Shown here: positions 2,794-63,557 of the stretch, piece after piece
How positions within the stretch are numbered: position 1 is the stretch's first letter
How the letters are laid out: every line of letters starts with the position of its first letter
Virus record (IMG/VR): IMGVR_UViG_3300028654_000001
Coordinates: 186,001 to 250,000 of that record
DNA length: 64,000 bases
Strand: one strand, 5' to 3'
Position numbers and translations under genes: made by a program
Notes under the pieces: generated by a model
Database searches by the model: none
Seen by the model: only the letters and a program-made list of their open reading frames with translations
What the model was told of the DNA's origin: nothing

Positions 2794-2859
2794 TTGAGTA
2801 TAATACACCAAAAGCCTATTGAAATTAGGTTGGATTGGTGTCTACTATTGATTATTACG

Positions 2860-3063
2860 ATGAAAGACCCTGGTAACCCTGACTTACTGCAGATGCATGT
2901 ACGGTACCAGTCAGCTTTGAGTGCCTATAAGGCGGCAAAAAGTGTGTTCAGATTAGCTAGGAAGGAGTTAAAATATTCTAGAATCTCTGAGTTGCGAGTT
3001 AAGAGAAAAGCGGCCAAGCGGAATCTTAGAAAAAGTACTGAGAACAGAGAACCTCATACGTAG
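2860..3063 (+). CDS. small basic hypothetical protein
   Basis: Lys/Arg-rich helical ORF from Met 2860. Confidence 0.45.
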   Translation: MKDPGNPDLLQMHVRYQSALSAYKAAKSVFRLARKELKYSRISELRVKRKAAKRNLRKSTENREPHT

Positions 3064-3074
3064 TAGTTAATGAC

Positions 3075-3566
3075 ATGGAAAACTCAAGCCTAAGACAAAC
3101 TAACCCCAATGCAGAACGCAACCCCTTGAACCATCAACCTGATGAATCGGGTATTGCCCAAGTTAGTATTGATGCAAGGGAAACAGTTCCTCCAACAACA
3201 ACCTCGAGGCTTCTAGCTCATGTTGAAGCTCTTCGATTACAGCAGAAGATGGTGGGGAACTTCATTGGAAGAACTCTTATGAAGAGTGTCCGGATTAATC
3301 CAGACTCTTGGAGCTTTGACCTTGTCCTCACACACCTTGATAAACCAGAAATCATCGAAGAGGTGGCTCAACTCATCGAAGCAGATCCTGGTAAGGTATC
3401 CATTCACATCTCACTGTGCTACGGAAGGTTCTTCCACGGCATCTTCGTTGACGGACATATCCAACGCAGTAAGGCTGCCAAGAAAACTCTCCAGACCATA
3501 CCCTGGTCCTACTTAGTCCAGACGATGATCGAAGAGCCGGAGGATACTACTTCGATCCTAGAGTAG
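3075..3566 (+). CDS. hypothetical protein
   Basis: 163-aa ORF. Confidence 0.7.
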   Translation: MENSSLRQTNPNAERNPLNHQPDESGIAQVSIDARETVPPTTTSRLLAHVEALRLQQKMVGNFIGRTLMKSVRINPDSWSFDLVLTHLDKPEIIEEVAQLIEADPGKVSIHISLCYGRFFHGIFVDGHIQRSKAAKKTLQTIPWSYLVQTMIEEPEDTTSILE

Positions 3567-3606
3567 ATCTGAGAGTGTATCTAAAGGGGCCTCTACAAGG
3601 TAACCT

Positions 3607-3948
3607 GTGAAAGACCGATTCGCGGCGGTAGCCGCAGTAACCAGGGCTCTGCTAAAAGGACTAGTAGTTCAAACGGAATACTTCTCCGTTGACCCTAATA
3701 AAGTAGTCCACTGGACTGAGATTGGAGGTGAGATCCTTATTCAGGGGTATGACTCATTTGACATGGCCAGCTTTTTCATAGAAATGCTAGGGTCTGATCG
3801 TCCAGAGTTGGCCCAGATAGCTGCAAGCGAAGCCCTAGAAGGAACAGCCCCCACGTATAAGCGTCCTGAGATTATCCACAACTCAGACCCCAATGAACTG
3901 TTTGAAGAGCCCTCAATCGAAAATATTCGGGTAAGAACTTTCCGATAG
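3607..3948 (+). CDS. hypothetical protein
   Basis: 113-aa ORF, GTG start. Confidence 0.65.
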   Translation: MKDRFAAVAAVTRALLKGLVVQTEYFSVDPNKVVHWTEIGGEILIQGYDSFDMASFFIEMLGSDRPELAQIAASEALEGTAPTYKRPEIIHNSDPNELFEEPSIENIRVRTFR

Positions 3949-3987
3949 TAGCCCTCCAACACTAAGAGTTCACATCAATCACTGAGT

Positions 3988-4560: not shown

Positions 4561-4599
4561 GGCTTGATTTGTAACCCAGGTTCGGTGTAAAGGCTAGCC

Positions 4600-5298
4600 A
4601 TGCCTCAACCCCACGAGTATATCGCCTTTGCTCTTGATGTCCCTGATGCCAGTACGGCGGAGCGTTTCATTACGATCCTCGAGCCTTATGTGGGTGCCTT
4701 TAAGGTAGGTCTGGAATTATTCATAAATACCGGACGAACCTTCATGGAGTTGACCACCAACCCAATCATCCTGGACCTCAAGCTGAATGATATCCCAGAA
4801 ACAGTGGAGCGGGCGGTCAAGACCGGCGGAGACCGTGGTGTCAAGTTCATGACGATCCACGCCCAGCAGAGGAAGGCCCTGGAGAAGGCGGTTAAGGCGG
4901 CCGAACCCTTTGGGATCACACTCTTGATGGTCACCGTTCTTACTTCGATGTCCGAAGAGGACTACAAGGAGTTGGACTTCAACCCAAAGAACAACATCCA
5001 GAGCCGTGTCGGGAGCCTCGGTGCATTTGGGTATGATTGTGGCATACGAGGATTCGTTTGCTCTCCCCATGAAGTTAGGTCTCTGAGTCAGGTGATGCCT
5101 GGAGCCTTTTACCTCGTACCTGGGGTTCGCCCAGTAGGATCCTCAGTAGGTGATCAAAAGCGTGTCGGGACGCCCTCTCAAGCTGTCCTTGACGGAGCTA
5201 AGCTGATCGTTATCGGTCGACCCATTCGAGATGCCCAAGATCCGAAAGCTGCTGCTCAAGCTATTGCCGAAGAGATTCGAATCGGAACTGCTCACTAG
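4600..5298 (+). CDS. pyrF: orotidine 5'-phosphate decarboxylase
   Basis: ALD, KVGLEL, DLKLNDIPETV, VTVLTS, VPGVRP, DQKR, VIGRPI motifs. Confidence 0.96.
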   Translation: MPQPHEYIAFALDVPDASTAERFITILEPYVGAFKVGLELFINTGRTFMELTTNPIILDLKLNDIPETVERAVKTGGDRGVKFMTIHAQQRKALEKAVKAAEPFGITLLMVTVLTSMSEEDYKELDFNPKNNIQSRVGSLGAFGYDCGIRGFVCSPHEVRSLSQVMPGAFYLVPGVRPVGSSVGDQKRVGTPSQAVLDGAKLIVIGRPIRDAQDPKAAAQAIAEEIRIGTAH

Positions 5299-5657: not shown

Positions 5658-6329
5658 TCATCCTTGACCGCTTCGAGCCATGTCATGATCCATTTCTACA
5701 CCGGGTAGCTCCCACGGTGCATACCCGTCGGTGAACTCGAGGTAGGGATCTGGAACCTTGATGCCTGGGTCATGAATGCCTTCAGACTTAATGTAGTAAT
5801 CCATGAACTTCCAGAAGTGGATACTGACTTGCTTTTTATCTAGTTGGCAGATCAACTTCCCTGGCTCATGCCCAACAACATCAAGGAGGGTTCCTGGGGG
5901 TAGACTAATGTCCTCACGATAATCAAAGCCCTGTCCTCGGCGCTCTTCATCCTGGTTGATGATGAACTCCTCCAACTTTCTGATCATCTGAACCTGTTTA
6001 CCCACTGCCTTGGAGAAAGCTATGTCGAGCTCGATGTCTCGAGCCCACTTGGGGAGAACCTTCTCAACCTCAGCATAGGCGGCGGCAATAGCTTCAACCC
6101 TACTCGGTGCAGTCACCCGAATACAACAATCCGTCTCCTCGTGCTCACCCCCTGGGTAGTCTTCCAAAGGGTGCACGTTGATCTCGATGGTCGCTCGAAA
6201 CTCATCGTCATTCCAGTTGGCACCAATCCCATAACCCAGAGTCTCCTCGAGGTGGTACGAAGTAAGACCCCTTCTGACGGGATTTAACAGATCTCGAATA
6301 CGCTTTCTGGCTTCAATAATATCTTGCAT
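5658..6329 (-). CDS. hypothetical protein
   Basis: 223-aa ORF. Confidence 0.75.
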   Translation of the reverse strand: MQDIIEARKRIRDLLNPVRRGLTSYHLEETLGYGIGANWNDDEFRATIEINVHPLEDYPGGEHEETDCCIRVTAPSRVEAIAAAYAEVEKVLPKWARDIELDIAFSKAVGKQVQMIRKLEEFIINQDEERRGQGFDYREDISLPPGTLLDVVGHEPGKLICQLDKKQVSIHFWKFMDYYIKSEGIHDPGIKVPDPYLEFTDGYAPWELPGVEMDHDMARSGQG

Positions 6330-6356
6330 CGGTCTTTTGGTGTATCACTGACCTAT

Positions 6357-6569
6357 ATGGAACGTCAAGACCGGGTTACTATTGTTGAAAAGGCCAAGTC
6401 AGTAGTTCAAATCCGTGAATTGATTCGAACGGGTTCTGACGAGGAGGGTAATCGACCATCCCCTCAAGTTCCTGAGTTTCGATATTCTTTCATTGTGTCT
6501 AGGTTAGATACCCGGTATGCTTCCAAAACTGAGTTCCAGCGGTTCGTGGGAAATAACCTCTCATGGTAA
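6357..6569 (+). CDS. hypothetical protein
   Basis: Start set at 6357: GGTGTA 6339-6344 lies 12 nt upstream. Confidence 0.55.
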   Translation: MERQDRVTIVEKAKSVVQIRELIRTGSDEEGNRPSPQVPEFRYSFIVSRLDTRYASKTEFQRFVGNNLSW

Positions 6570-7178: not shown

Positions 7179-7346
7179 AGAATCCTCCTCCTTAGGTACA
7201 CTTAGGAAAGGACTAGTTATTTCTTAGCTCTTAAGAGTCTCAAGTTGAGGACCGGAGAGCCTAATCTCTTGATTTTAGCCGTAATCTACACTATATGCTA
7301 CCCAGCGAAGTCTCAACACAGAAAGTTCTTTTGGTGTAATAGTGGT

Positions 7347-7910: not shown

Positions 7911-8645
7911 ATGTCTTCAGATCTCGAACTAGTAGAGCGAGTCAAGCGACGCTTCTTGGCTCATCAAGATCGCGCTAGTCGACGTCTAATTCCATTCGAT
8001 ATACTCAAAGTAAGCGAGTTAGCCAGAGAGATTACAGAAGAAGCTCTTGACTACTTGGAGCATCGTATCGACCCTGGTTCAACTCTAGGTTCAAGTGTAC
8101 GACCTAATGCCATTTGTGCATCTAAAATCATCAACCTGAAGACTGTCAAAGGGGATGACGTTGACTTCCTAGTTCAGGTTAGAGTTGGAAAGACCGCTCA
8201 TGGCGATAAAGCTACTCACGGGTACTATGATCATAGAGACAACACCATCGTAATTTACCTATCACCTTGGTTGAACTCAGACGATCTAAATGAGACTCGT
8301 AAGTACGATATTGTGAATGAGAACAAGAGTGTACTCATTCATGAAGTGACCCATGCCCTCGATGTCATTGACAACTACAAAAAGGAAGAGGGCACTGCTT
8401 ATTACAACAACCCTCATGAGATACGAGCATTCACCAGACAGATTGTTGATGAAGCTAGTAGGGTGTTGAAGGGTCTTCGCCTCACCTCACGAGCACTGAA
8501 GAGGCCTATGCCTCAAGGGTCTAAACTAGTAGAAGCGCTACTTGATGGATCAAAGACGTGGCGTGAGATTAAGAATAACTTGAACGACGCTAGCAACAAG
8601 TACATTCGTCAAGTGCTCGTCAATGAACTAGACCTCGTGGTGTAA
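7911..8645 (+). CDS. zincin-like metallopeptidase with N-terminal RVxxRF motif
   Basis: LIHEVTHALD (HExxH) and downstream YYNNPHEIRA. Confidence 0.7.
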   Translation: MSSDLELVERVKRRFLAHQDRASRRLIPFDILKVSELAREITEEALDYLEHRIDPGSTLGSSVRPNAICASKIINLKTVKGDDVDFLVQVRVGKTAHGDKATHGYYDHRDNTIVIYLSPWLNSDDLNETRKYDIVNENKSVLIHEVTHALDVIDNYKKEEGTAYYNNPHEIRAFTRQIVDEASRVLKGLRLTSRALKRPMPQGSKLVEALLDGSKTWREIKNNLNDASNKYIRQVLVNELDLVV

Positions 8646-15428: not shown

Positions 15429-15779
15429 ATGCCAAAGAAAAGAGCAATTCTGGTTGGAACAGCAGAGCCGTTACCAAACCCACGCCCCCGGAAGAAGGTT
15501 AATCCAACTCCCCCAAGCCCCTTTGCCCCGGTACCTACCCTAGGCCCCTATGGCACCCGGGACAACCGGGAGAAGCTGATGTTATTCCTGCGAGGGTTCA
15601 AGGATGGGGCAGCAGCCACCGCCCACCGGCACCCAACAGAGTTGCCCTACCTAAAAGGGTACGAGGAAGGCTCAAGGGCACGGGCAGGGGCCGTACGAAT
15701 CTTCTGTGACGAGATTGGACACGACCCAATGCAAGACATCCTTCGGTGTAATACCGTGGATGCTACTGAGAATAGATGA
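15429..15779 (+). CDS. hypothetical protein
   Basis: 116-aa ORF directly after the ligase. Confidence 0.6.
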   Translation: MPKKRAILVGTAEPLPNPRPRKKVNPTPPSPFAPVPTLGPYGTRDNREKLMLFLRGFKDGAAATAHRHPTELPYLKGYEEGSRARAGAVRIFCDEIGHDPMQDILRCNTVDATENR

Positions 15780-17060: not shown

Positions 17061-17078
17061 GGTGTAACAAGGTACACC

Positions 17079-18505: not shown

Positions 18506-18547
18506 TGGGCAGGCCCCGTCAAGAACTTTTTGGTGTACTTAGGACGT

Positions 18548-21039: not shown

Positions 21040-21160
21040 AATGTGTCGGCGAACCCAATCCTAGGGGATGGTTAGAAAAGCCGTCTCCTACCCTATAAAA
21101 ACCCATCGGGAATTTATCAAGTCCTACGGTAGTTTAGAGGTGGTTGGTGTAGCTGTAGGT

Positions 21161-22710: not shown

Positions 22711-22735
22711 TTAGTAAAAGGTGTAGGATACCCGC

Positions 22736-24767: not shown

Positions 24768-24806
24768 TTTGGGTATCGGTGTAACTAGATTGCTGGACCA
24801 ACTAGC

Positions 24807-26803: not shown

Positions 26804-28042
26804 ATGACTACAGCTCTTGCACGACCTAAGTTTTCGTGGAGGAAAGTTCTCGCTTTCGCGACTGATATCCTCCAAAAGCTTCCGAATCGAAGTGATGGGG
26901 TTCTGGCTATCATTGTCAAGTCTCTTTCCATTGTTGACTCATTCAACGTCCAAATGAACAAGGGTAAGTCAACTGCCCTGTTCGACTTCTTCGGCGATCT
27001 AGACTTGATTGAGGTAACCAATGCCCAGTTTGTCAGCTTGTTCTACTCAACAGGACTGAGGGACAGCTTCAAGATCATCAAATTCGAGATGGGGGATTAT
27101 GTAGAGATCGTGAGAGCCGAACACACTGGGATCGGTACTCTCTACTTCGTTGAGTGGCACTGGGGAAGTAAACCAGAACCTTCTGCTGACTTCTGGCATA
27201 CCAAGGGGTTCAACTTTGAGAAAGCTCTCGAGGTACTTTGGGACAAGTTCCACGGACGCCTCCATCTAGGGATCACCCAAGACCGAAGTGGGGAGCTCAA
27301 GTCAACCTATTCGGAGATTCCCGAGCCAAAAGATCCACTCTTAGGGAAGACCGCGGCCGTCCTTGACGAGTTCAAGGAGCAACACCTACTCTACATGAAG
27401 GATAAGATCCCGAGAACCTATCTGTTCTGCGGAAAGCAGGGGATCGGTAAGACATGCTTCTGTCTTCGACTCTCTCAACTCACCGGCGGTCGAACTCTGC
27501 GCATTGATGCCTGTGGGATCACCTCGGTTGGAGTCAAGGACCTAGACTTCATCATCAATGGTCTGTGCCCTAACTTCCTAATCGTGGATGACATCGACCG
27601 AGCTCCGGAATTGGAGAAGTCCCTCCCAACCCTGTTCTCAATCCTCTCAGACTTCAAGTGCAAGCACCCCAATGTCACCGTGGCCTTGACCATCAATGAC
27701 ATCACTAAACTTGACCCAGCCCTTCTGAGGCCAGGTCGTATTGATGAGATCATCGAGTTTGAACCACCCGATGAAGAAGAGCGTAGTCAAATTCTTGAGG
27801 GGTATCTGAAAGAGTTCGAGGTAGCCACTGAGGTAGACCTGAAGAGGATCGCTGAGTCTACTGAGGGGTTAACCGCCGCCTACCTTCGAGAAGTAGCCCT
27901 TCAACTCCGGTATCGCCCCCAAGAGAGAGTATTGAAGGTCATCAACCGGATGAACGATCTTGCCAGCGCCAAAGAGGAAAAGAAGAAAGAAACTAAGTGT
28001 AGCGAACCCGTTGGAAACTCGGCCCGCGCGACTCCGGTGTAA
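26804..28042 (+). CDS. AAA+ ATPase
   Basis: Walker A GKQGIGKT, Walker B IVDDID, SRH LDPALLRPGRID. Confidence 0.9.
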   Translation: MTTALARPKFSWRKVLAFATDILQKLPNRSDGVLAIIVKSLSIVDSFNVQMNKGKSTALFDFFGDLDLIEVTNAQFVSLFYSTGLRDSFKIIKFEMGDYVEIVRAEHTGIGTLYFVEWHWGSKPEPSADFWHTKGFNFEKALEVLWDKFHGRLHLGITQDRSGELKSTYSEIPEPKDPLLGKTAAVLDEFKEQHLLYMKDKIPRTYLFCGKQGIGKTCFCLRLSQLTGGRTLRIDACGITSVGVKDLDFIINGLCPNFLIVDDIDRAPELEKSLPTLFSILSDFKCKHPNVTVALTINDITKLDPALLRPGRIDEIIEFEPPDEEERSQILEGYLKEFEVATEVDLKRIAESTEGLTAAYLREVALQLRYRPQERVLKVINRMNDLASAKEEKKKETKCSEPVGNSARATPV

Positions 28043-31951: not shown

Positions 31952-32003
31952 CTAGTAATCAAGTACACCTCACATCAGAAAGTTTTTATGACAAACACTT
32001 GGC

Positions 32004-32564: not shown

Positions 32565-32668
32565 GATTCCTCCTACTATACTCTTTAGAATCCGGTGGAA
32601 ACTACACCAGAAGCACCGAGTTTGCATCAAGTTTTTGCAAGACCACCAAAAAGGTGTAAGCTTAGCTC

Positions 32669-33598: not shown

Positions 33599-33790
33599 AT
33601 TTTTGAGTACACCGAGTAGAAAGTTGTTTACTTCAGCCTACCGTTGATGTACACCTAGACCTTAGGCGGCTCTAGAGAGGACCTTCTGCTCCGCCCCCCT
33701 CAAGACAGAGGGTCTCCTAGGGCCGTCAATTATTTTGGTATTTAGAGGGATACATTTGTCCAGAAATGAGTGTACCCTGATTTAGGTAAA

Positions 33791-34276: not shown

Positions 34277-34377
34277 ACTAGGTCAAGACCTAGAAGATCA
34301 GCGCCAACTCTGTAAACGCCCGATGACTTAAGAGACAGCGCGGACGAAACGGATAAGGCCTCGGTGTACTTGGGGGA

Positions 34378-36680: not shown

Positions 36681-36718
36681 TAGTTACCACTACACCGGTG
36701 TAAGTGGTAACTAATGCC
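36676..36718. promoter_or_regulatory. palindromic divergent promoter region (two back-to-back GGTGTA motifs)
   Basis: ggcattagttaccactacacc|ggtgtaagtggtaactaatgcc; perfect inverted repeat except one extra A. Confidence 0.7.
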
Positions 36719-39611: not shown

Positions 39612-39653
39612 TAGTATTCTTTTTATAGTTTTGGTGTAGTGTTCACTGCCATT

Positions 39654-41142: not shown

Positions 41143-41718
41143 GTGGGTTGTTCACTCCTCTTTAGAAGAGCAATACTAGTTGAGGTAGCCCCTTGGTTAC
41201 ACAGTAGTTGCCAGCTTGTGGTTGCTTATGGCGGTGGTCAAATCACTGTCCATAGGTATGACCCCTACAGCATGATTGAAGAGGATTCCAGGATAGTAGG
41301 GAGATCTATCAACCTCCCTATTCGTCACTACTACTACGTTGACACTACAGAACAGGGGTACTACTTCTATGTTGACATTCAGGGTAACATACTCGAGTTC
41401 GATAACTCAACGTTTTTTGACTTAGCTCGAATGAGCAATGACCCAAGTCTAGGGTATGGTCACGAACCGATAATAGGAGTCCTTAGATCAAACCCTGTTA
41501 GGCCAACGAGGTTCGAGCGAATCCTTAGAGAGAATGAAATCTGGGAAGATTACCGCCCCACCCCAAAGCCAATCCAAGAAACCAGGAAAACTGAAGTCAC
41601 TGAAGCTGATCTAGCAGCTATCTTCAACAAGCCCCAAAAGTTGATTGCAGATGCTCCTAAACCCATGGACATTGATATCCTCAAGTGCATGGAAGAGGTA
41701 TTAGGTAAGACCTCTTAG
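41143..41718 (+). CDS. hypothetical protein with internal TRFER tag
   Basis: PVRPTRFERILRE. Confidence 0.7.
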   Translation: MGCSLLFRRAILVEVAPWLHSSCQLVVAYGGGQITVHRYDPYSMIEEDSRIVGRSINLPIRHYYYVDTTEQGYYFYVDIQGNILEFDNSTFFDLARMSNDPSLGYGHEPIIGVLRSNPVRPTRFERILRENEIWEDYRPTPKPIQETRKTEVTEADLAAIFNKPQKLIADAPKPMDIDILKCMEEVLGKTS

Positions 41719-41734
41719 GTGTAATGAGGGTGCT

Positions 41735-43782: not shown

Positions 43783-44343
43783 CTACACCAAAAATGGAAA
43801 GCGTACTCTAGCTTGCACTAACTTACGATATAGAGCTTCTTTACCAGGCATTGAGAACGGTAGCGTGGTGAATATCTTGTCGTCACCAGAGTCACCACCC
43901 CACAGTACCATCTCGTATGCGGCCCATTCAAATGGTCCAACAGCCACTGACTCTATGGGCTCTTCTGCGTAAGCTAGACACACATGAGGCTTGTAAGTTG
44001 GGTACTTCTTAGAGTACCCAACTTTTGCTTTATCCAAAGAACTGCATAGATCCTCTTGAAAACTCATTAACTCTGAGCTAACAACAGATCCAATGATTGG
44101 AACACCCTCATCGCCTTTCGGAAAGCAGATAACCTCTTCAATGAGTAGTTGAATAGGTTTGGTGCGAGCTGCCACTTCATAGGCCACTACAATAGCTTTT
44201 GAGATGTGATCAATAGGAACTTTACTGCCCAAGTGTACGCAGGTTATGTGTTTTTCGTCCCGAGGTACGGGCTCTCCAGGAACCTGAATCTGGCTCAGGA
44301 GACGCGATACTTCGTGAGGAACTTTAATCCCGATGAAGGCCAT
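43783..44343 (-). CDS. 2H phosphoesterase (LigT/Acb1-like)
   Basis: KHITC and YKPHVCLAY histidine motifs. Confidence 0.85.
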   Translation of the reverse strand: MAFIGIKVPHEVSRLLSQIQVPGEPVPRDEKHITCVHLGSKVPIDHISKAIVVAYEVAARTKPIQLLIEEVICFPKGDEGVPIIGSVVSSELMSFQEDLCSSLDKAKVGYSKKYPTYKPHVCLAYAEEPIESVAVGPFEWAAYEMVLWGGDSGDDKIFTTLPFSMPGKEALYRKLVQARVRFPFLV

Positions 44344-44402
44344 TCACTACCTCAACTTGATAAGAGGAATTTCTCACTCTAACTTCAGGTGTAATAAACG
44401 AC

Positions 44403-48818: not shown

Positions 48819-48865
48819 GCTCCCAAAGGGGATACACCAGAGACCGTCTAAGGCATCGACTTGTG

Positions 48866-49114: not shown

Positions 49115-49821
49115 GCCTCGCCCCTTTTCGGCTCGGTTAGAGAAAAGATTCGTTCTCTATGAAGTTGGAAGATAGGCTTCACAGGGTCCTTCTTCGCCCC
49201 TTCATGATCTATCCAACGTAACCACTTTGCCTCATCTGATCTGAAACTAGTAGCACACCACTTAGCTAGAAGCTCAGCTGACCCGAAAGTTGTGGAAACT
49301 GGACGACCCTCAGGGGGTTCGAACTCCCAAAGCTGCCAAGCATCTCCAGACGGAGGTTCAATTGGTTGCCATTCTTCGTATAGGTTGATCCCTCTGTAGA
49401 GGCGCTGAACAGCTGGGTTCTGATTGGGGATTGTTTGAGTTCCTGCGCAGAGATCACACAAACCCCATACACCTCTTCGTCGAGCTCGGATCTCAATGAG
49501 GTAGGACCTAATCAATGGGGAGTCAGCTGACCAATTTCTATTCTGAAGTTTGGTAACTTCAGTCAAGTCCATTCCACTTTGCTTAGCTGCTACGAGTTCT
49601 AGTTTTGTAAGTCGACTAGCCCATTTCTTGAATGTGAAGTACAGTTTAGTACACTCTTCGTTCAGCCCAGTACCGTGACAGAGGGGACATGGAATTGGAC
49701 CAGGCCACGGGTTGATGTACCCGTTCCAAACCTGACCTATAGGCCAATCGAATTCAAATGGAACTCGTTTTATGAACCATCGCTGACTCACAACTGGCTT
49801 CAAATATAAGGGCTTTTTCAA
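49111..49821 (-). CDS. hypothetical protein with DnaJ-type CxxCxG zinc motifs
   Basis: CPLCHGTG, CDLCAGT; EPPSG..WQLWE..EG.P.S. Confidence 0.75.
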   Translation of the reverse strand: MKKPLYLKPVVSQRWFIKRVPFEFDWPIGQVWNGYINPWPGPIPCPLCHGTGLNEECTKLYFTFKKWASRLTKLELVAAKQSGMDLTEVTKLQNRNWSADSPLIRSYLIEIRARRRGVWGLCDLCAGTQTIPNQNPAVQRLYRGINLYEEWQPIEPPSGDAWQLWEFEPPEGRPVSTTFGSAELLAKWCATSFRSDEAKWLRWIDHEGAKKDPVKPIFQLHRERIFSLTEPKRGEA

Positions 49822-49852
49822 TGAATACTGATCTCGGTGTAGTTAGCAGTAC

Positions 49853-51100: not shown

Positions 51101-51102
51101 TA

Positions 51103-54278: not shown

Positions 54279-54282
54279 ACTT

Positions 54283-56693: not shown

Positions 56694-56726
56694 GGAATTT
56701 CACCGAAGTGCTTCAAATAAATGAGC

Positions 56727-56761: not shown

Positions 56762-56775
56762 TTATGTTATGCAAA

Positions 56776-57744: not shown

Positions 57745-57800
57745 GAGAGACCTCTACTTTCCTTCATGTTTACTGTTAGAACAACTCGTTGTGGTCTGAT

Positions 57801-58046: not shown

Positions 58047-58053
58047 AAGCCTC

Positions 58054-59442
58054 TTAGACCCGTGAAAGATTCTTCTCTGAATTCTTTCGAACTTCTGAGA
58101 ACTTCATGTCACGTATGAGCTTGCCGTTTTCGAAGACAACCTGAAGCACGTCTGACTTGGTTGACCCAGCTGGAACCGACTTGAACTCCCCACCTTCCAT
58201 AATGAGGCTCAGTCGCCCCGACTTTGAAACCTTGCCTGGATCAGTAACAGGATCTTTGAACACGGGCACGGTTGCCCCTGTATCAGTTGTGATCTCCGAG
58301 CACTTCAGAGCCCACTTCTGGGTATCGCGATCCAACTGCTGAAGTAAGCCGCCGCCCATACCGAAGGCAATGTTCGAGGTTGAGTACTTGTGAGCCGTTA
58401 TTGTGGCAAGGATCTCACGAAGTGAGTCAATGTTGATGCCGTCACCTTGAATGAGCTTGAAGTAGGGGGGAAGAACCTTGAACCCACGCATGTTCCTGGT
58501 CATCCCAAGCTTGTTCTCAAGTGTCTGTAGGCACCGAAGAACCATTGCGGGTGGATCCCCTGAATCAGGTCGGATCACCAAGCAACCACCAGAATTCTTT
58601 ACCTGATCAAGGAGCTCTCCGCACCACATGTTCTCGATAACATTGAAGATATCGTAACTATCCGACACACAGGCAACGACCTTGTCCTTTTTCAGGAACT
58701 GAGTGATCATGTTGCGGTAGGCGAGGAGCTCTCGTTCACGGCCCCACGAAGTAATGCTCGAATGCTCAGCCGCTGGGATTGAGAATCCGGCCATGGGCTC
58801 ACCATAGAAAGCCCTAGCAAACATGATCCCTTCGAGGGTATCGGTACCCCTGAAGTTCACGAGATGGCTCATACCTCCGATGCCAGCCGATTCATGTGAG
58901 CTGACCCCTCGGGCTCCGAAGTCGTGCAGCTTGAAGTAGATCTCGGCCCAAGGATCGTTGGCTGTCTCCAATAGGTGCTCGAGAATGACTCGCTTGCAGT
59001 AGTAGGACTGGGTGGCCACCGTACTCGGGTACCATGTGCGAACAATCTGAGCTTCTAACCAACTGGCTGCCCAGAAGGTATCAGCGCCGCCGGTGCTCTC
59101 CAATGATAGGACAATGTTCCGGGTTGGAACCTCCAGACCCTCAGGCACCGCCTTGATCCTCACAGGCCAGTACCCACCGTTGGCCACTATTTTCCCAAAA
59201 CCTTCTGCATTGAATGGCTCCCCATGAGCCTCCAGAACCTCCTTGGCTTCGACAACATCCGCGTCCGTGATGGGTGTCGTAAGGTATTCCTTGATCAGGT
59301 ACTGCAGTCCAAAGAAAATTGTAGATCCGAACTTACCACCCCGTGACTCCATGTAATCGTACATCCCAGTGGTGCTCGGTGGGTAAGTCAGCCAATGGGC
59401 TGACTTATAACTGTCTGTATTTAATATTGGATTGAATCTCAT
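58054..59442 (-). CDS. nadV: nicotinamide phosphoribosyltransferase (NAMPT)
   Basis: TDSYK, FFGLQY, WYP.TVAT, LHDFGARG, PAAEHS, VSDSYD, IRPDSGDP, QGDG, FGMGG.LLQ, KDP.TD.GK.SK.GR. Confidence 0.95.
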   Translation of the reverse strand: MRFNPILNTDSYKSAHWLTYPPSTTGMYDYMESRGGKFGSTIFFGLQYLIKEYLTTPITDADVVEAKEVLEAHGEPFNAEGFGKIVANGGYWPVRIKAVPEGLEVPTRNIVLSLESTGGADTFWAASWLEAQIVRTWYPSTVATQSYYCKRVILEHLLETANDPWAEIYFKLHDFGARGVSSHESAGIGGMSHLVNFRGTDTLEGIMFARAFYGEPMAGFSIPAAEHSSITSWGRERELLAYRNMITQFLKKDKVVACVSDSYDIFNVIENMWCGELLDQVKNSGGCLVIRPDSGDPPAMVLRCLQTLENKLGMTRNMRGFKVLPPYFKLIQGDGINIDSLREILATITAHKYSTSNIAFGMGGGLLQQLDRDTQKWALKCSEITTDTGATVPVFKDPVTDPGKVSKSGRLSLIMEGGEFKSVPAGSTKSDVLQVVFENGKLIRDMKFSEVRKNSEKNLSRV

Positions 59443-59451
59443 CTTGTCCTC

Positions 59452-60183
59452 TCATAACTCGAAGTTAAAACCGCTTTGAACTGCTTTATCGTACTTCTTC
59501 TGGTCAAATCTGTAAAGTTGGGCAGGCCTGCCTAGTTTAGGATGGATTGCACCACCGACCCCAACTAGGATGCCCATGAGGATAATTCGGCGTCTGAAGT
59601 TACCCTTATCAAGCTTCTTCTGAAGGATCGCTTCGTATAACTGTTGCAACTGCCCGAGAGTGAACGTCGTCGGTAGCAGGTTGAAACCTATTGGAGCGTA
59701 TCTGATCTTCCCTTGAAGTCGGTTAAGGGCTAACTCTAGGATCTTCTTGTGATCAAAAGCCAACTTCATTCGACTCAGCTTATTAACTGAAGTCCAGACA
59801 GCCAGGTCTGCATCGTCCCCGCCGACGATATCTTCGTAGTCGGTTTTTCTAACCAAGGCGAAGTAAGCAACTGAGATGACTCTCCCGCGTGGATCACGAA
59901 ATGGATCTCCAAAGGTATAGAGTTGTTCCAGATACTCGAAACGGGCTCCGGTCTCCTCTTCTACCTCGCGTACAACAGCTGCTTCTAAGCTCTCATTACC
60001 CCCAATGTTGACGTAACCCCCTGGAAGTGCCCAGTGATGTTTGAAAGGGTCCCTAGCCCGTCGAATTAGAAGAACCTTGAGTGGGTTGTCCTCGTCACTT
60101 GGATCAAAGCCGAATACAATTCCATCTACGGTAAGGGCTGACATCGGCCAATCGTAAACGAACCTCTTCTTTTCTTTGGTCAC
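59452..60183 (-). CDS. nrtR: NrtR-type Nudix-wHTH transcriptional regulator
   Basis: WALPGG..RE..EETG Nudix box, LEQLYTF..RDPRGR, LAFDH, FTL..LQ..YE.IL..NFRR..GRPA.LY. Confidence 0.9.
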   Translation of the reverse strand: MTKEKKRFVYDWPMSALTVDGIVFGFDPSDEDNPLKVLLIRRARDPFKHHWALPGGYVNIGGNESLEAAVVREVEEETGARFEYLEQLYTFGDPFRDPRGRVISVAYFALVRKTDYEDIVGGDDADLAVWTSVNKLSRMKLAFDHKKILELALNRLQGKIRYAPIGFNLLPTTFTLGQLQQLYEAILQKKLDKGNFRRRIILMGILVGVGGAIHPKLGRPAQLYRFDQKKYDKAVQSGFNFEL

Positions 60184-60524
60184 TTGTCAATCCCCAGAAA
60201 CTTCTTAGTAATTGATGCAGCCTCAACCATTGGAATCTTTCTGTGTGAAACGGTTCTGTTGAGCTTTGGCCTGAAGTACACGATGCAGGCCATCTCTAGC
60301 AGGTCTAAGTCAGCCTCTGGGTCAACTCTTCGTATGAAGATCTGATCGAATTCCTTTGACTTATGCCTGACTATAGCTGAATGAACGCTAATTGATTGAC
60401 CTATATACATCAACTCCCCTAATAGGAATAGAAAATAAATCACAGAGGTTCTATACACCTCGACTTCTTCAAGGAGTTTTGCCTCAACCTCCTCGGTTAC
60501 TACCTTCCGTATGATCTTGGCCAT
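60180..60524 (-). CDS. GIY-YIG-like small protein
   Basis: VIYFL..MYIGQS..H..E..I..P.LN. Confidence 0.6.
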   Translation of the reverse strand: MAKIIRKVVTEEVEAKLLEEVEVYRTSVIYFLFLLGELMYIGQSISVHSAIVRHKSKEFDQIFIRRVDPEADLDLLEMACIVYFRPKLNRTVSHRKIPMVEAASITKKFLGIDK

Positions 60525-60559: not shown

Positions 60560-60656
60560 GTCAAGGTAGAAAAGAATATTTCTGTAACCAGTTGTAATCA
60601 TTACGGTTAACCAAATGACTCTCACATTTTTGACATACTTGGTGTAAAGGTGCCAA

Positions 60657-61118
60657 ATGCCAGTGCAAAGGCGAGGGCGTGCGGTTGACTTTGTAAAGGA
60701 AATCCTGAACCACGAGCACAGAGACTGGGTTCGATCCGATGACCCAAGCACTTCCAGTTGGGGCTTCGAGTGTCGGATTTGCAAATCCCGCTACCTAATA
60801 GCCATCGAAGCCTTCCGATACCAAGGGGGCGACCGCTACTCGAATGCTCTCCGAGATTGTGCAATGGATCCGAGAAAGGATCCATTGGAGACAGTTCTTG
60901 GGTTCGATTGTATCGCCTGTCATACGACTGAGGGCGTCAAACTGGAACCTTCAAGAACTCAATATGGTACAACGTATCCTCGAACGAGGTTCGAACGAAT
61001 ACTTGACCCTGAGCCAGAAGATCCTAACATCGACATCCCTCTCTGCCGAAGTTGCGCAGAGGATCATCATTCGTACTGGGATGAAATGTGGCAGATGGTT
61101 CGATATGATCAGATGTGA
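60657..61118 (+). CDS. Zn-finger protein with internal TRFER tag
   Basis: CRIC, CIAC, CRSC..H; YPRTRFERIL; GGTGTA 10 nt upstream. Confidence 0.75.
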   Translation: MPVQRRGRAVDFVKEILNHEHRDWVRSDDPSTSSWGFECRICKSRYLIAIEAFRYQGGDRYSNALRDCAMDPRKDPLETVLGFDCIACHTTEGVKLEPSRTQYGTTYPRTRFERILDPEPEDPNIDIPLCRSCAEDHHSYWDEMWQMVRYDQM

Positions 61119-61468
61119 GGAAGCAAATGAAAGAAGTTAGGTATTTCACCTGCGAAACTGTCAGTGAGGCTAAGTGGTCCCTAATCGCAGAGGATCACCG
61201 ACCTCGCCTTGATGTCCGCTTCTTCGGACTGAGACGGGACATCGAGGGTCGCCCCGAGGAAGAGGTCTACCAGGTCAAAGACCCAAACTATGCAAAACTT
61301 TACCAGGAGATCAACAACCAAACTCCTGGCAGCTACGTCTTCAGGAAGTTCAAACTTACCCAAGCCGAGTGGTGCTGGATTCGCGGCGTCATCCACAGCC
61401 TGATGTGTGACAACGCTACCTCGGTACCAATCGAGGCTATCTTAGTGGGGGACTCAAAGGCTCTTTAG
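61115..61468 (+). CDS. hypothetical protein
   Basis: Coupled to the previous gene. Confidence 0.65.
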   Translation: MRKQMKEVRYFTCETVSEAKWSLIAEDHRPRLDVRFFGLRRDIEGRPEEEVYQVKDPNYAKLYQEINNQTPGSYVFRKFKLTQAEWCWIRGVIHSLMCDNATSVPIEAILVGDSKAL

Positions 61469-62236
61469 TCCTTCAACCATCTTGTCGACCCGAGCCCAAA
61501 GATCGGTGAGGGTCGAGTTGTTGTCCAATACCCAATCGAAGTCATCGTCATGTAGGGAAAGTAAATCATTCTCACTCTTGTGATCTGGGGATACTTTGAT
61601 CTCTTTGACCTTCCGCTTCACACGGACAAGCTTTCCACCAGCTTTGCGAACGGCCTCAGCTTCATTCTGATATCGTAGGTCGGTGAGTACCACGTCTGTA
61701 CGAGGTACTCCAATGAGGACCGGGCCTCCCTTGATCCCAGAGCAATGAAAGTTTGGGTTACTTGAGTGACGGGCTTCAGCAAGTTGGTAGAGTCCCAGCT
61801 TCTGGTCGTACCCAAACTTGCCGGTAGCCAGCCTGTTGGTCATACGGATAGCGTACTCCGCCCAGATAGGCTCGTAGCACTCATTGCGCCCCCACCCGTC
61901 ACCCAAGGTTTGGAGAGCGTGCCTGACCGTCAAGCAAACTTGAGTATGGTCCTCAGCGGAATGAACTAAGGGACTTCCTCCGAAGATAGTTCTGGGGTAC
62001 CTCGGATCTTCCTTGTTCCGATTCTCACTCGGACCCCACAACTGGTCATCAGTGAAATCAAACACATCTTTCAGGATACGCTTAAGGGGATCAGCAAAAG
62101 CAATCGGAACATAGTTGTGGGCTTGAACTAGCTGTCTAGCAGCTTCGTCCTTACCCGCACCGGCGCTACCTCTCTTACGGGAGAGCCCATTGAACCAACC
62201 AGCCTCAGTGGTGAGACCCGAGATAGCTATCAACAT
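61454..62236 (-). CDS. deoxynucleoside monophosphate kinase
   Basis: GAGKD, FADPLK, R..LQ.LG..WGR, DLRY.NE, H.SE. Confidence 0.88.
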   Translation of the reverse strand: MLIAISGLTTEAGWFNGLSRKRGSAGAGKDEAARQLVQAHNYVPIAFADPLKRILKDVFDFTDDQLWGPSENRNKEDPRYPRTIFGGSPLVHSAEDHTQVCLTVRHALQTLGDGWGRNECYEPIWAEYAIRMTNRLATGKFGYDQKLGLYQLAEARHSSNPNFHCSGIKGGPVLIGVPRTDVVLTDLRYQNEAEAVRKAGGKLVRVKRKVKEIKVSPDHKSENDLLSLHDDDFDWVLDNNSTLTDLWARVDKMVEGLKSL

Positions 62237-62245
62237 GTACTCGGA

Positions 62246-63493
62246 CTACACCGAGTAAGGGACGAGGCCTTCGTCTGAGTTCAATATAGACCAAAGGATC
62301 ATTCCTAGTGTAGACCAATCTACACTAGTCTTATCTATAGACGAGGAATCATTGACCAAGTCCCTAAGCTTGATTACCTCAACGTAGGTTTTCTCTGTGT
62401 CAACCTCTATACCGAAAGTCTCTCCGGATTGAGCTATTCCCATAAGGTGGTCTCGCTCAGCCTTAGTGATCCTCCCGTAGAACAACGTGCTTGTGTGAGC
62501 TGATAGAGTACCTGCCAGCTGCAAGGTACCCAGCTCCTTGAGTCGAGCTGGGTCTATGGTGAAAGAGGTTTCCTCGTGGAGCTCTTCGAGGGCCACTTTC
62601 TTGGTCTCCCCTTTATCTTCCTTGGCGCTCCCACCTGGTAGCTCAATAATATACCCTGTATTAGTCCTAGCCGGGCTTCTAAACTCTTTTACCAAGAGAA
62701 CCTCAGTATCCCACAGATGCTTGAGACCCTCTTCCTCAGGACGGTAGAGAAGCGCTACAGATGAGACGTCTGAACGTCCGAACACGAACTCATTTTTCTT
62801 GGCCCTTTGTTCGGCTGCAATCCAAACATTGACATGAAGGCACCAGCAAAAGACTTTGTCCATCTGCTGTCCCACCCGGAATGTCCAAAGGACTCGAGCA
62901 CTGTCCAGGCGGTTGCCAGCGGCCGTCTGGGACTTATACCACCTCTGGAAGGTGGTGTCCTTCCAGACGAGCAAGGGTACCTGAGCTTCGCCGCCGACTC
63001 GTAGGGAACCCTCTCCCAGGCTCTTGACGGCATCCTCGAGGGTGGTGTCCAGTGTCGAGTAGTTGGCCACCTTCAACTTGGTAGCCATGTGCTGAATGTA
63101 TTGAACCTTCTGAGCATCAGGTGGGGTACCAAGAATCACCTTCCCTGTGTCTGCCCAGACTCCGAATTCGACATTGGTTGTAAGACCTGGGAGAGTATTC
63201 AGATCTCGAGGAATCCAGAAAACAATCACATCAGCCATATTCAGTGCGGAGGTTTCCCACTCAACCTGGTCGACGTAATCTCCGAACACTTTTCCATCAC
63301 GAGGTTCCGGAACAAATACGTGACCATCGAACCCAAGCTTCTCAAGTAGTTCGAGGGCTTCGGGTCTCCAACTCTTGGTTTCCTTATCCCTAGGTGTAGG
63401 CCCCGCCAAAAACAGACTCTTCACAACCTCTGTGGGAAGATCCTCTTTAGCATAGACCACCTTCATGCCCGACTTCCATGTCTCTGGATTCAT
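62246..63493 (-). CDS. nucleoside deoxyribosyltransferase-like domain fused to a Nudix hydrolase
   Basis: LFLAGPTPR..SWR..WE..ADVIVFW..TTNVEFG; EFRSP..ELPGGS..ALEELHEET. Confidence 0.8.
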   Translation of the reverse strand: MNPETWKSGMKVVYAKEDLPTEVVKSLFLAGPTPRDKETKSWRPEALELLEKLGFDGHVFVPEPRDGKVFGDYVDQVEWETSALNMADVIVFWIPRDLNTLPGLTTNVEFGVWADTGKVILGTPPDAQKVQYIQHMATKLKVANYSTLDTTLEDAVKSLGEGSLRVGGEAQVPLLVWKDTTFQRWYKSQTAAGNRLDSARVLWTFRVGQQMDKVFCWCLHVNVWIAAEQRAKKNEFVFGRSDVSSVALLYRPEEEGLKHLWDTEVLLVKEFRSPARTNTGYIIELPGGSAKEDKGETKKVALEELHEETSFTIDPARLKELGTLQLAGTLSAHTSTLFYGRITKAERDHLMGIAQSGETFGIEVDTEKTYVEVIKLRDLVNDSSSIDKTSVDWSTLGMILWSILNSDEGLVPYSV

Positions 63494-63557
63494 GGTCCAG
63501 AATTACACCGGAAGTTGGGTACCTAGTTTACTAAACCCCTTATCGGAGTGTTCAAGC

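What the first reader, a model, noticed from the sequence alone, without database searches (positions are those of the whole stretch)
2804..63509. GGTGTA element 8-15 nt before more than 20 start codons, mostly without a Shine-Dalgarno
GGTGTA with its spacer to the start. Plus strand: 4584(10), 6339(12), 7333(8), 8639(9), 15745(9), 17061(12), 18532(10), 21146(9), 22720(10), 28036(9), 32653(10), 34363(9), 36697(11), 39633(15), 41718(11), 44388(9), 49836(11), 60641(10). Minus strand (TACACC): 2804(10), 17073(12), 31964(12), 33608(9), 36691(10), 43784(10), 48833(14), 62247(10), 63504(10). It picks better starts than the longest-ORF calls and is often embedded in the end of the previous gene. Inference: a phage-specific promoter giving leaderless or near-leaderless mRNAs, or a non-canonical translation-initiation signal.
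Basis: partly seen in the sequence, partly recalled or inferred. Interest (0 to 1): 0.7.

Follow-up and report, generated by a model that had tools for sequence, protein, structure and literature searches.

The report
Phage promoter hexamer making leaderless mRNAs
GGTGTA sits 9-10 bases before about a hundred start codons in this 512-kb soil phage and its relatives, and it is most likely a short phage-specific promoter that starts transcription at the start codon, not a ribosome-binding site.

Summary
All 27 listed sites exist at the stated spacers, and I found three more. The window has 50 GGTGTA copies against 25.7 expected, and 30 of them precede an ORF start.

Across the 512,571-bp phage genome, GGTGTA is the most start-linked hexamer. 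I count 95 sites, with spacer mode 10, then 9, then 12. One-mismatch variants and the perfect 16S complement GGTGAT show no start linkage.

The evidence favours a -35-less promoter that produces leaderless mRNAs:
- Motif genes sit at the heads of transcription units (divergent upstream neighbour 51% against 19%).
- They lack Shine-Dalgarno sequences, while other genes are enriched for them.
- Copies 19-43 nt from a start usually have a canonical SD in between.
- A copy lies 15-18 nt before the non-coding tmRNA gene in two genomes.
- A second, clearly bipartite promoter class in the same genome places its GTA in the same register before ATG.

The motif and its spacing are kept in eight related huge-phage records with GC of 49-59%. 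All of these records carry an unusual sigma-like protein family.

No transcript data were available, so the transcription start site and the recognising factor are inferred. I rate this a new variant of a known kind.

The parts
4584..4589 (+). GGTGTA, N10, ATG 4600; gene 4600-5298 (232 aa, OMP decarboxylase family)
6339..6344 (+). GGTGTA, N12, ATG 6357; gene 6357-6569 (70 aa)
   Evidence: motif kept in relative G001
7333..7338 (+). GGTGTA, N8, ATG 7347; gene 7347-7889 (180 aa, nucleoside 2-deoxyribosyltransferase)
8639..8644 (+). GGTGTA, N9, ATG 8654; gene 8654-9286 (210 aa); motif lies in the end of the previous gene
15745..15750 (+). GGTGTA, N9, ATG 15760; gene 15760-16179 (139 aa)
17061..17066 (+). 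GGTGTA, N12, ATG 17079; gene 17079-17537 (152 aa). Half of a divergent pair catGGTGTAacaaggTACACCatg whose start codons are 18 nt apart
17073..17078 (-). GGTGTA, N12, ATG 17060; gene 16461-17060 (199 aa). Other half of the divergent pair
18532..18537 (+). GGTGTA, N10, ATG 18548; gene 18548-18925 (125 aa)
21146..21151 (+). GGTGTA, N9, ATG 21161; gene 21161-21538 (125 aa)
22720..22725 (+). GGTGTA, N10, ATG 22736; gene 22736-23020 (94 aa)
28036..28041 (+). GGTGTA, N9, ATG 28051; gene 28051-28344 (97 aa); motif inside the end of the AAA ATPase gene 26804-28042. The orthologue in G001 has GGTGTT
32653..32658 (+). GGTGTA, N10, GTG 32669; gene 32669-33076 (135 aa)
34363..34368 (+). GGTGTA, N9, GTG 34378; gene 34378-34845 (155 aa)
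36697..36702 (+). GGTGTA, N11, ATG 36714; gene 36714-37754 (346 aa). Abuts the minus-strand copy as TACACCGGTGTA
36691..36696 (-). GGTGTA, N10, ATG 36680; gene 36294-36680 (128 aa). In relative L005 a 58-nt insertion separates the two copies, yet each gene keeps its own
39633..39638 (+). GGTGTA, N15, ATG 39654; gene 39654-40838 (394 aa, AAA ATPase). Longest spacer of the set; relatives also have N15
41718..41723 (+). GGTGTA, N11, ATG 41735; gene 41735-42670 (311 aa)
44388..44393 (+). GGTGTA, N9, ATG 44403; gene 44403-44951 (182 aa)
49836..49841 (+). GGTGTA, N11, GTG 49853; ORF 49853-50032 (59 aa)
60641..60646 (+). GGTGTA, N10, ATG 60657; gene 60657-61118 (153 aa)
2804..2809 (-). GGTGTA, N10, ATG 2793; gene 2299-2793 (164 aa)
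31964..31969 (-). GGTGTA, N12, ATG 31951; gene 31406-31951 (181 aa, HAD_SAK_2 domain)
33608..33613 (-). GGTGTA, N9, ATG 33598; gene 33035-33598 (187 aa, NADAR domain)
43784..43789 (-). GGTGTA, N10, ATG 43773; gene 43246-43773 (175 aa)
48833..48838 (-). GGTGTA, N14, ATG 48818; gene 48363-48818 (151 aa)
62247..62252 (-). GGTGTA, N10, ATG 62236; gene 61454-62236 (260 aa); motif overlaps the end of the upstream gene
63504..63509 (-). GGTGTA, N10, ATG 63493; gene 62246-63493 (415 aa, nucleoside 2-deoxyribosyltransferase-like)
5697..5702 (-).
60454..60459 (-). Extra copy: GGTGTA, N10, GTG; ORF 60180-60443 (87 aa)
49468..49473 (-). Extra, weak copy: GGTGTA, N10, GTG, 63-aa ORF. Purines precede the motif, so it may be a chance match
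24778..24783 (+). Leadered copy: GGTGTA 23 nt before ATG 24807 of the 657-aa gene; motif and distance identical in two relatives
32603..32608 (-). Leadered copy: GGTGTA, N38, ATG about 32564, with a canonical tAGGAGGaatcATG Shine-Dalgarno in between; motif kept in relatives
1950..1980 (-). Second promoter class: GGTGGGGATC, 13 nt, GTAATACT, ggtt, ATG 1945 (gene 1604-1945)
1310..1337 (-). Second promoter class: TGAGA, N16, GTAATAC, then a 17-nt leader with AGGAG before ATG 1292 (gene 1071-1292)
849..876 (-). Second promoter class: TGAGAT, N15, GTAATAT, N7, ATG 841 (177-aa ORF)

Best explanation
YYGGTGTA is the only conserved element of a -35-less promoter specific to a clade of huge soil phages. 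Its TA takes the place of the first two bases (-12/-11) of a -10 element. RNA polymerase therefore starts 9-10 nt downstream, on the A or G of the start codon, and the mRNA has no leader or only 1-3 nt of leader. Such mRNAs need no Shine-Dalgarno sequence.

Downstream genes in the same unit are translated through SD sequences or overlapping stop-start junctions. When the motif lies further from a gene, the transcript has a short leader with an ordinary SD.

[quoted passage not shown] The best candidate, though unproven, is a clade-specific 384-aa sigma-like protein.

Shown here: the motif, its spacing, its position in transcription units, its conservation, and the lack of SD.
Inferred: the transcription start site, leaderless translation, and the identity of the factor.
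For: 1. Specificity. All six bases are needed. One-mismatch variants and GGTGAT, the best complement to a canonical 16S tail, are not start-linked. Start-linked copies also have Y at -1 (85%) and -2 (77%) and T at +2 (51%), and other copies do not.

2. Head-of-unit position. 51% of motif genes have a divergent upstream neighbour against 19% of other genes (Fisher p=1.6e-7). Only 1 of 32 same-strand cases overlaps or nearly abuts the upstream gene, against 39% of others (p=9e-6).

3. Motif density per kb per strand is 1.57 in divergent intergenic regions. It is 1.08 in the sense orientation of tandem regions and 0.24 in the antisense orientation. It is 0.22 in convergent regions, against a genome mean of 0.29.

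4. No SD at motif starts (5% against 24% and 9.5%). AGGAGG and AAGGAG are strongly avoided inside genes, so the host reads canonical SD.

5. Of 9 tandem-intergenic copies 19-43 nt from a start, 7 have AGGAG, GGAGG, GAGGA or AAGGA before the ATG (p=0.001 against the 24% rate).

6. Non-coding target. GGTGTA ends 15 nt before the tmRNA 5' end in this genome and 18 nt before it in record G006, with unrelated flanks. In G009 it is 88 nt upstream. The chance of two of three is about 2e-5.

7. A second class, ttGGTGAGATC then about 16 nt then cGTA[AG]TAC then N5 then ATG, has 32 copies, 22 at spacer 5. It is plainly a bipartite promoter. It puts 9 nt between its GTA and the ATG, the same register as GGTGTA-N9/10-ATG. 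Its few leadered copies have AAGGAGG or AGGAG.

8. Divergent pairs have start codons 18-33 nt apart, and each pair holds both motifs.

9. Conservation. 27 of 32 orthologous starts in a relative keep a perfect hexamer, against 0.9 expected. Per-site identity is 0.79 in the motif and 0.54-0.55 in flanks and spacer. Counts of GGTGTA-N9-10-ATG against the reversed control are 28/1, 42/2, 10/0, 22/7, 15/1, 79/6 and 48/5 in related records. De novo it is again the top signal in a 59% GC relative. Unrelated big phages give 5/8, 10/1, 1/3 and 1/1.

10. Three sigma-70 family ORFs are present. No RNA polymerase domains were found.

11. Start codons after the motif are ATG (51) or GTG (13), both starting with a purine. 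Pyrimidine at -1 of the start is 70% here, 70% in G008 and 94% in class 2.
Against: No 5'-end or other RNA data exist for this phage, so the start site is inferred from geometry alone.

About 200 copies lie elsewhere at roughly chance frequency. The hexamer alone may therefore not suffice, or spurious starts are tolerated.

Antisense copies inside genes are fewer than codon shuffles predict (51 against 90), but that depletion ranks only 290th of 4096 hexamers, so it is not decisive.

There is no T at the position equivalent to -7, so this is not a classical -10 hexamer.

No hairpin or terminator enrichment lies upstream of the motif.

A copy 5 nt before tRNA-Trp cannot serve that tRNA as a promoter.

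Spacers of 12-15 nt would leave 2-5 nt leaders, and their translation is untested.

Three giant ORFs of unknown function (1677, 1408 and 1195 aa) could hide an unrecognised polymerase.

The pyrimidine preference at -1 is not significantly above that of other genes in this genome (p=0.11).
Confidence: 0.75

Rival explanations
1. GGUGUA acts in the mRNA as a non-canonical ribosome-binding or translation-enhancer element. It would be read by the 16S rRNA, a ribosomal protein or a phage factor, on leaders of at least 16 nt.
For: The motif lies at a fixed short distance before start codons and replaces the SD there. GGUG can pair with CACC of a canonical 16S tail. Some copies directly follow tRNA 3' ends, which could give processed 5' ends. 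Conservation across phages of different GC could reflect a universal ribosomal target.
Against: T5 and A6 are indispensable but would mismatch the canonical tail, and GGTGAT, the perfect complement, is not start-linked. GGUG would end 11-12 nt from the AUG, outside the usual SD range.

The motif is almost absent from genes that overlap or abut the upstream gene (1 of 32 same-strand cases against 39%) and enriched at unit heads. It occurs 19-43 nt from starts that have their own SD and before the tmRNA gene.

In divergent pairs each mRNA would have to start inside the opposite gene. In the pair at 17061/17073 the motif could then pair with its inverted copy in the 5' leader.

No bS21 gene was found.
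Confidence: 0.1
2. GGTGTA is the binding site of a phage regulator, either a repressor or an activator, acting on DNA or RNA. It would overlap start regions, like stoperators or start-associated sequences of mycobacteriophages, while the true promoter is a different, degenerate signal.
For: It is a short, invariant, asymmetric, orientation-specific site before many non-structural genes and is conserved across a clade. Sites of this kind with unknown function are known in Cluster K mycobacteriophages (PMC3203893). The hexamer occurs elsewhere at chance frequency.
Against: No other conserved element exists within 50 nt upstream in either of two distant genomes. Sigma-70 consensus matches are at chance level. 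In divergent pairs with starts 18 nt apart there is no room for another promoter. The register matches the -10 of the bipartite class.
Confidence: 0.1
3. GGUGUA marks an RNA-processing site. A phage or host endoribonuclease would cut long transcripts there, giving mature mRNAs with short leaders.
For: Several copies lie 1-5 nt after tRNA 3' ends in a mixed tRNA/ORF array. Copies are embedded in the ends of upstream genes.
Against: Half of the motif genes have a divergent neighbour, so no co-directional precursor is evident. Divergent pairs would need read-through on both strands. There is no associated secondary structure. No candidate nuclease was linked to it.
Confidence: 0.03

Closest known systems
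T4-type late promoters (TATAAATA at -13 to -6, read by the phage sigma gp55 with gp33 and the gp45 clamp; PMC1524935)
   Same: A single short, nearly invariant element in the -10 region with no -35 element. It is specific to the phage, present in tens of copies, and conserved among related phages with different hosts. It depends on a phage sigma rather than a phage polymerase (the last point is inferred here).
   Different: The sequence differs (YYGGTGTA). The sigma-like ORF sigma3 matched no PHROG family at all, and the other two phage sigmas matched only generic sigma-factor families. T4 late mRNAs have leaders with SD, whereas here the start codon sits where the transcript should begin. Clamp or co-activator dependence is unknown.
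Promoters of leaderless genes in Actinobacteria and Deinococcus (TANNNT 7-12 bp before the TSS, no -35, TSS on A/GTG; PMC3898074, PMC4007540, PMC3160421)
   Same: A -10-type element about 10 nt before the start codon, no SD, ATG or GTG starts, and closely juxtaposed divergent promoters. Distal genes of the unit use SD.
   Different: Those are host housekeeping-sigma promoters with a degenerate TANNNT. Here the conserved part lies upstream of the TA (GGTG plus pyrimidines), the -7 T is absent, and the signal belongs to a phage clade, not a host.
ECF-type sigma promoters (bipartite, -10 containing CGT; recalled from memory, not tested)
   Same: The second class found here (GTGAGATC, about 16 nt, CGTA[AG]TAC) looks like this kind, and both classes share GTA. 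The phage sigmas score best with the sigma70-ECF superfamily model, or level with FliA/WhiG.
   Different: GGTGTA sites have no -35 partner.
Start-associated sequences (SAS) of Cluster K mycobacteriophages (13-bp GGGATAGGAGCCC, 3-7 bp before starts; PMC3203893)
   Same: A phage-specific, oriented repeat just before start codons of non-structural genes. It strongly prefers ATG and is conserved across subclusters before unrelated genes.
   Different: SAS contains the SD core AGGAG and sits at RBS distance, and its proposed role is in translation. GGTGTA has no SD, lies further upstream, heads transcription units and also precedes a tmRNA gene.

Membership tests
Shine-Dalgarno type ribosome-binding site | Complementarity to the 3' tail of 16S rRNA | tested here: not met
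   Only GGTG could pair with a canonical tail. T5 and A6 are required but would mismatch, and GGTGAT is not start-linked. The host 16S itself is unknown. Canonical SD use is inferred from SD-led genes and from SD avoidance inside genes.
Shine-Dalgarno type ribosome-binding site | Spacing of about 5-9 nt between the paired stretch and the start codon | tested here: not met
   There are 9-10 nt after the hexamer, so 11-12 nt after GGTG.
Shine-Dalgarno type ribosome-binding site | Found before internal genes of operons as well as first genes, and only before protein-coding genes | tested here: not met
   1 of 32 same-strand cases overlaps or abuts the upstream gene, against 39% for other genes. 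A copy lies 15-18 nt before tmRNA genes.
Bipartite sigma-70 family promoter (-35/-10) | A -35 element 16-18 bp upstream of the -10 element | tested here: not met
   Nothing is conserved upstream beyond three pyrimidines, in this genome or in G008. The feature is met by the second class in the same genome.
Bipartite sigma-70 family promoter (-35/-10) | A -10 hexamer with A at -11 and T at -7 | tested here: inconclusive
   TA is invariant. The -7 equivalent position shows T in only 22% of sites, and +2 is T in 51%.
-35-independent phage promoter of the T4 late type | One short invariant element in the -10 region, conserved across related phages | tested here: met
-35-independent phage promoter of the T4 late type | Read by a gp55-like sigma with a co-activator and the sliding clamp | not testable with these tools
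   sigma3 matched no PHROG family, and the other two phage sigmas matched only generic sigma-factor families. Three sigma-70 family ORFs exist, but which one reads the motif is unknown.
Leaderless mRNA genes | A -10-type element about 7-12 nt before the start codon and no SD | tested here: met
Leaderless mRNA genes | Transcription start coincides with the start codon | not testable with these tools
   No RNA run was listed and only DNA assemblies carry the gene. Indirect support: ATG or GVG-type purine starts only (ATG 51, GTG 13) and a pyrimidine at -1.
Start-associated sequences of Cluster K mycobacteriophages | 13-bp GGGATAGGAGCCC with an SD core, 3-7 bp from the start | tested here: not met
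   The sequence differs, there is no SD, and the spacer is 9-10 nt. Family features are from PMC3203893.

The most novel reading that the evidence does not exclude
The hexamer is read, without any -35 element, by the clade-specific 384-aa sigma-like protein. That protein has an N-terminal half of sigma region 2, a roughly 200-aa Cys4 insertion that resembles an HNH domain, an invariant block VHNIYANWCRTR, and a C-terminal helix-turn-helix.

This would be a previously undescribed sigma-promoter pair that has stayed fixed (GGTGTA, N9-10, start codon) across 400-510-kb soil phages of 49-59% GC. It would run about a hundred leaderless transcription units per genome.
Probability: 0.3. Interest if true: 0.75.

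Novelty: new variant of a known kind. Interest (0 to 1): 0.6.

Why it matters
- The motif gives a simple rule for placing gene starts and transcription units in a group of huge soil phages that has no cultured member. No GenBank phage carries the marker protein.
- About a sixth of the genes of a bacteriophage would be expressed from leaderless mRNAs, a mode better known from Actinobacteria, Deinococcus and archaea.
- The finding points to a compact 6-9 bp promoter with a candidate dedicated sigma, which could be tested as an orthogonal expression part.
- It also hints that the unknown hosts translate leaderless mRNAs efficiently.

Tried and rejected
- **RNA evidence.** No RNA run was listed for a 6-kb stretch with six sites. 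The 346-aa motif gene is found only on DNA assemblies.
- **Complex prediction** of the sigma-like protein with promoter DNA was not folded by the tool and counts for nothing.
- **Terminators.** There is no excess of hairpins upstream of the motif. Consensus terminator and sigma-70 promoter scans are at chance level.
- **Selection against stray copies.** Antisense depletion inside genes (51 against 90) is not exceptional among hexamers, so it is only suggestive.
- **A hidden -35 element.** None is shared between this genome and G008.
- **A phage RNA polymerase.** PF00623, PF00562 and PF00940 gave no match. Giant ORFs show no polymerase family, though three remain unknown.
- **bS21.** None found.
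- **Second-class promoter pattern in IMG/VR.** Only five single, probably chance, matches.
- **Relatives of the 188-aa sigma.** None found.
- **The sigma-like family in 185,579 species genomes.** None found.
- **Assigning the factor by presence or absence.** All relatives also carry a 214-231-aa sigma, so this cannot decide.
- **Fold search of the sigma-like model.** ECF sigmas appear only weakly, and the insertion resembles HNH. A profile comparison with the 188-aa sigma aligned only the C-terminal helix-turn-helix, without significance.
- **Host identity.** Not established.
- **PurZ (Z-genome) reading of the adenylosuccinate synthase homologue.** Not supported.
- **Literature.** No paper holding GGTGTA together with at least two of 'promoter', 'phage' and 'leaderless' appeared among the 15 listed results.

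Full report
**Source of the window.** The window is bases 186001-250000 of a 512,571-bp IMG/VR virus record with direct terminal repeats. GC is 0.49 and the standard bacterial code fits. The record carries 42 tRNA genes and a tmRNA. It comes from rhizosphere metagenomes. It has no 16S gene.

**Check of the observation.** GGTGTA occurs 50 times in the window, against 25.7 +/- 4.7 in shuffles. Every one of the 27 listed sites is real, with an ATG or GTG at the stated spacer opening ORFs of 59-415 aa. Three further start-linked copies exist.

Genome-wide there are 297 copies. Of these, 73 are followed at 9-12 nt by an ATG opening at least 60 codons. Seventeen control hexamers give 0-4 per spacer bin in that range. 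The controls include AGGAGG, GGAGGT, GGTGAT, permutations of the motif and one-mismatch variants.

A scan of all 4096 hexamers against all ATGs that open long ORFs ranks GGTGTA first. It is also the most enriched 6-mer (22-fold) before crude longest-ORF starts.

The logo is YY(Y)GGTGTA. G is nearly excluded at -1, T is frequent at +2, and nothing is conserved further upstream to -45. The spacer mode is 10, then 9, then 12. I count 95 start-linked sites in the genome. They are dense at 170-250 kb (the window) and 440-510 kb. They are almost absent from the long minus-strand operons at 320-440 kb that hold the portal, protease, baseplate and tail genes.

**A second signal in the same genome.** About 32 strict copies of ttGGTGAGATC, about 16 nt, cGTA[AG]TAC, N5, ATG lie mostly at 10-190 kb. 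Three of them are at the left edge of the window. With two boxes about 17 bp apart this can only be a promoter.

Its downstream box ends 5 nt from the ATG in 22 of 32 copies, so these transcripts must be leaderless or nearly so. A few copies instead have longer leaders holding AAGGAGG or AGGAG at normal SD distance. In this class, 9 nt separate the A of GTA from the A of ATG. In GGTGTA sites the distance is 9-10 nt. The two classes therefore share GTA in one register relative to the start codon.

**Promoter or ribosome-binding site?** Seven lines of evidence favour a promoter.
- Motif genes head transcription units. 51% have a divergent upstream neighbour against 19% of other genes. Only 1 of 32 same-strand cases overlaps or abuts the upstream gene, against 39% of others.
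- Motif density per kb per strand is 1.57 in divergent intergenic regions. In tandem regions it is 1.08 in the sense orientation and 0.24 in the antisense orientation. It is 0.22 in convergent regions, which is the genome background.
- Motif starts and second-class starts are poorer in SD-like words than random sequence, while other genes are enriched (5%, 0%, 24% and 9.5%). AGGAGG and AAGGAG are among the most avoided hexamers inside genes, so the host ribosome reads ordinary SD.
- Nine tandem-intergenic copies lie 19-43 nt from the next start, and seven of them have an SD in between. Examples are window 32603(-) with tAGGAGGaatcATG, and the copy 23 nt before the 657-aa gene. Both are kept in relatives.
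- A copy ends 15 nt before the 5' end of the tmRNA gene in this genome (ARAGORN and Rfam agree on the end). Another ends 18 nt before the tmRNA of record G006, with unrelated flanking sequence. In G009 a copy lies 88 nt upstream, with an SD and a small ORF in between. A ribosome-binding site has no role before a tmRNA gene. A start about 10 nt downstream would give a 5-8-nt precursor leader.
- Divergent pairs such as catGGTGTAacaaggTACACCatg (window 17058-17081) hold both motifs in the 18 nt between two start codons. That leaves no room for other promoters. If the motif were RNA, each transcript would have to start inside the opposite gene.
- As an SD it fits badly. Only GGTG could pair with a canonical tail, and it would end 11-12 nt from the AUG. 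The perfect complement GGTGAT shows no start linkage.

**Weaker support.** Starts after the motif are ATG or GTG, both beginning with a purine. A pyrimidine precedes them in 70% of cases here, 70% in G008 and 94% in the second class.

**Non-supporting results.**
- There is no hairpin excess upstream.
- Consensus terminators are at chance level.
- The antisense depletion inside genes is unremarkable among hexamers.
- About 200 copies elsewhere occur at chance frequency.

**Conservation.** Relatives at 67-78% protein identity keep the hexamer before orthologous genes while the flanks change. One relative has a 58-nt insertion between the divergent pair at window 36691/36697, yet each gene keeps its own copy.

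Of 32 motif genes with an N-terminal orthologue in the 145-kb relative G001, 27 keep a perfect hexamer at 8-12 nt, against 0.9 expected. Per-site identity is 0.79 in the motif and 0.54-0.55 around it.

Eight IMG/VR records chosen only because they encode a homologue (33-57% identity) of one phage ORF all show the pattern. Counts of GGTGTA-N9-10-ATG against the reversed control are listed below.

| Record | GGTGTA-N9-10-ATG | Reversed control |
|---|---|---|
| G002 | 42 | 2 |
| G003 | 3 | 1 |
| G004 | 6 | 1 |
| G005 | 10 | 0 |
| G006 | 22 | 7 |
| G007 | 15 | 1 |
| G008 | 79 | 6 |
| G009 | 48 | 5 |

G001 gives 28 against 1. In 400 kb of G008 (GC 0.59) the de novo hexamer scan again puts CGGTGT and GGTGTA first, with spacer mode 9. 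Four unrelated large phages show no such excess. A signal held fixed across genomes of such different composition suggests a phage-encoded reader.

**Candidate readers.** The genome has three sigma-70 family ORFs. One is 188 aa with regions 2 and 4. One is 269 aa. One is 384 aa and matches only the first half of region 2. No multisubunit or T7-like polymerase domain was found, and no bS21. The giant ORFs show no polymerase family, though three remain unassigned.

The 384-aa protein defines a family of 55 clusters. All are metagenomic, and many lie on contigs of 200-512 kb. The family is absent from GenBank phages and from 185,579 species genomes. Of 42 members, 34 hit Sigma70_r2.

The alignment shows four features:
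- an N-terminal region 2.1/2.2-like stretch;
- a Cys4 insertion;
- an invariant FKxYLAxxVHNIYANWCRTRxRxY block;
- a C-terminal helix-turn-helix-like end.

In a model with mean pLDDT 78, the insertion resembles an HNH domain, and ECF sigmas appear only as weak matches. Every relative also has a 214-231-aa sigma. The co-occurrence therefore does not tell which protein reads GGTGTA, and the assignment stays an inference.

**Comparison with known systems.** In logic the closest system is the T4 late promoter. That is one short element at -13 to -6, with no -35, read by a phage sigma and conserved among relatives (PMC1524935).

In geometry the closest are the promoters of leaderless genes in Mycobacterium. 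These have TANNNT 7-12 bp before the start site, no -35, purine starts, juxtaposed divergent promoters and both ATG and GTG starts (PMC3898074).

It differs from both in three ways. The conserved bases lie upstream of the TA, the -7 T is missing, and the signal belongs to a phage clade.

The start-associated sequences of Cluster K mycobacteriophages are similar in placement. They contain the SD core and sit 3-7 bp from the start (PMC3203893).

Among the 15 papers listed by the search for GGTGTA with 'promoter', 'phage' and 'leaderless', none contained GGTGTA.

**Verdict.** The promoter and leaderless reading is the best supported (about 0.75). It still lacks transcript evidence, and the recognising factor is open.

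Noticed in passing
window 849-1980 (minus strand); genome about 10-190 kb: A second, bipartite promoter class: ttGGTGAGATC, about 16 nt, cGTA[AG]TAC, N5, ATG. It has about 32 strict copies, mostly before small ORFs of 55-130 aa, and also gives leaderless starts. A few copies have SD-bearing leaders. The exact pattern was not found in other IMG/VR records beyond five single matches.
   Followed up: partly
window 53139-60183 (minus strand) and 33035-33598 (minus strand): A cluster of NAD-related genes: NAMPT (58054-59442), a Nudix protein resembling the ADP-ribose-responsive NtrR/NMNAT-Nudix family (59452-60183), a cytidylyltransferase/NMNAT-like protein (53139-54278), a kinase-like protein (54283-55326) and a NADAR-domain protein (33035-33598). 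It may be a phage NAD salvage or counter-defence module.
   Followed up: partly
window 55314-56693 (minus strand): An adenylosuccinate synthase homologue. It scores far better with PurA models (161 bits) than with the PurZ model (38.8 bits), though below both cut-offs. A 2-aminoadenine genome is therefore not indicated.
   Followed up: partly
whole genome (coding regions): TTTAAA (1 observed against 52 expected) and TTATAA (7 against 66) are almost absent from genes relative to codon shuffles. This looks like restriction-site avoidance. SD-like hexamers (AGGAGG, AAGGAG, TAAGGA) are also strongly avoided inside genes.
   Followed up: no
genome 457932-479593 and 498602-498674 (minus strand), outside the window: 42 tRNA genes are interleaved with small ORFs. 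There is a tmRNA whose ARAGORN tag reads VADLPRDSLGSG, and a tRNA with anticodon CTA (a possible amber suppressor). TAG is nevertheless used as the stop of 125 of 521 crude genes.
   Followed up: no
genome 484268-485422 (minus strand), outside the window: A 384-aa sigma-like protein whose region 2 appears split by a Cys4 insertion of about 200 aa that resembles an HNH domain. The family is found only on large metagenomic phage contigs.
   Followed up: partly
genome 295843-300093 (minus strand), outside the window: A family A DNA polymerase gene of 1416 aa carrying an intein with a LAGLIDADG domain.
   Followed up: no
genome 277071-279446 (minus strand), outside the window: A 791-aa ClpX-like ATPase interrupted by an insertion (tblastn matches it in two pieces). 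It is preceded by GGTGTA at N13.
   Followed up: no
window 11441-12793 (plus strand): A CCA-adding enzyme / poly(A) polymerase family protein with an HD domain, in keeping with the large tRNA set.
   Followed up: no
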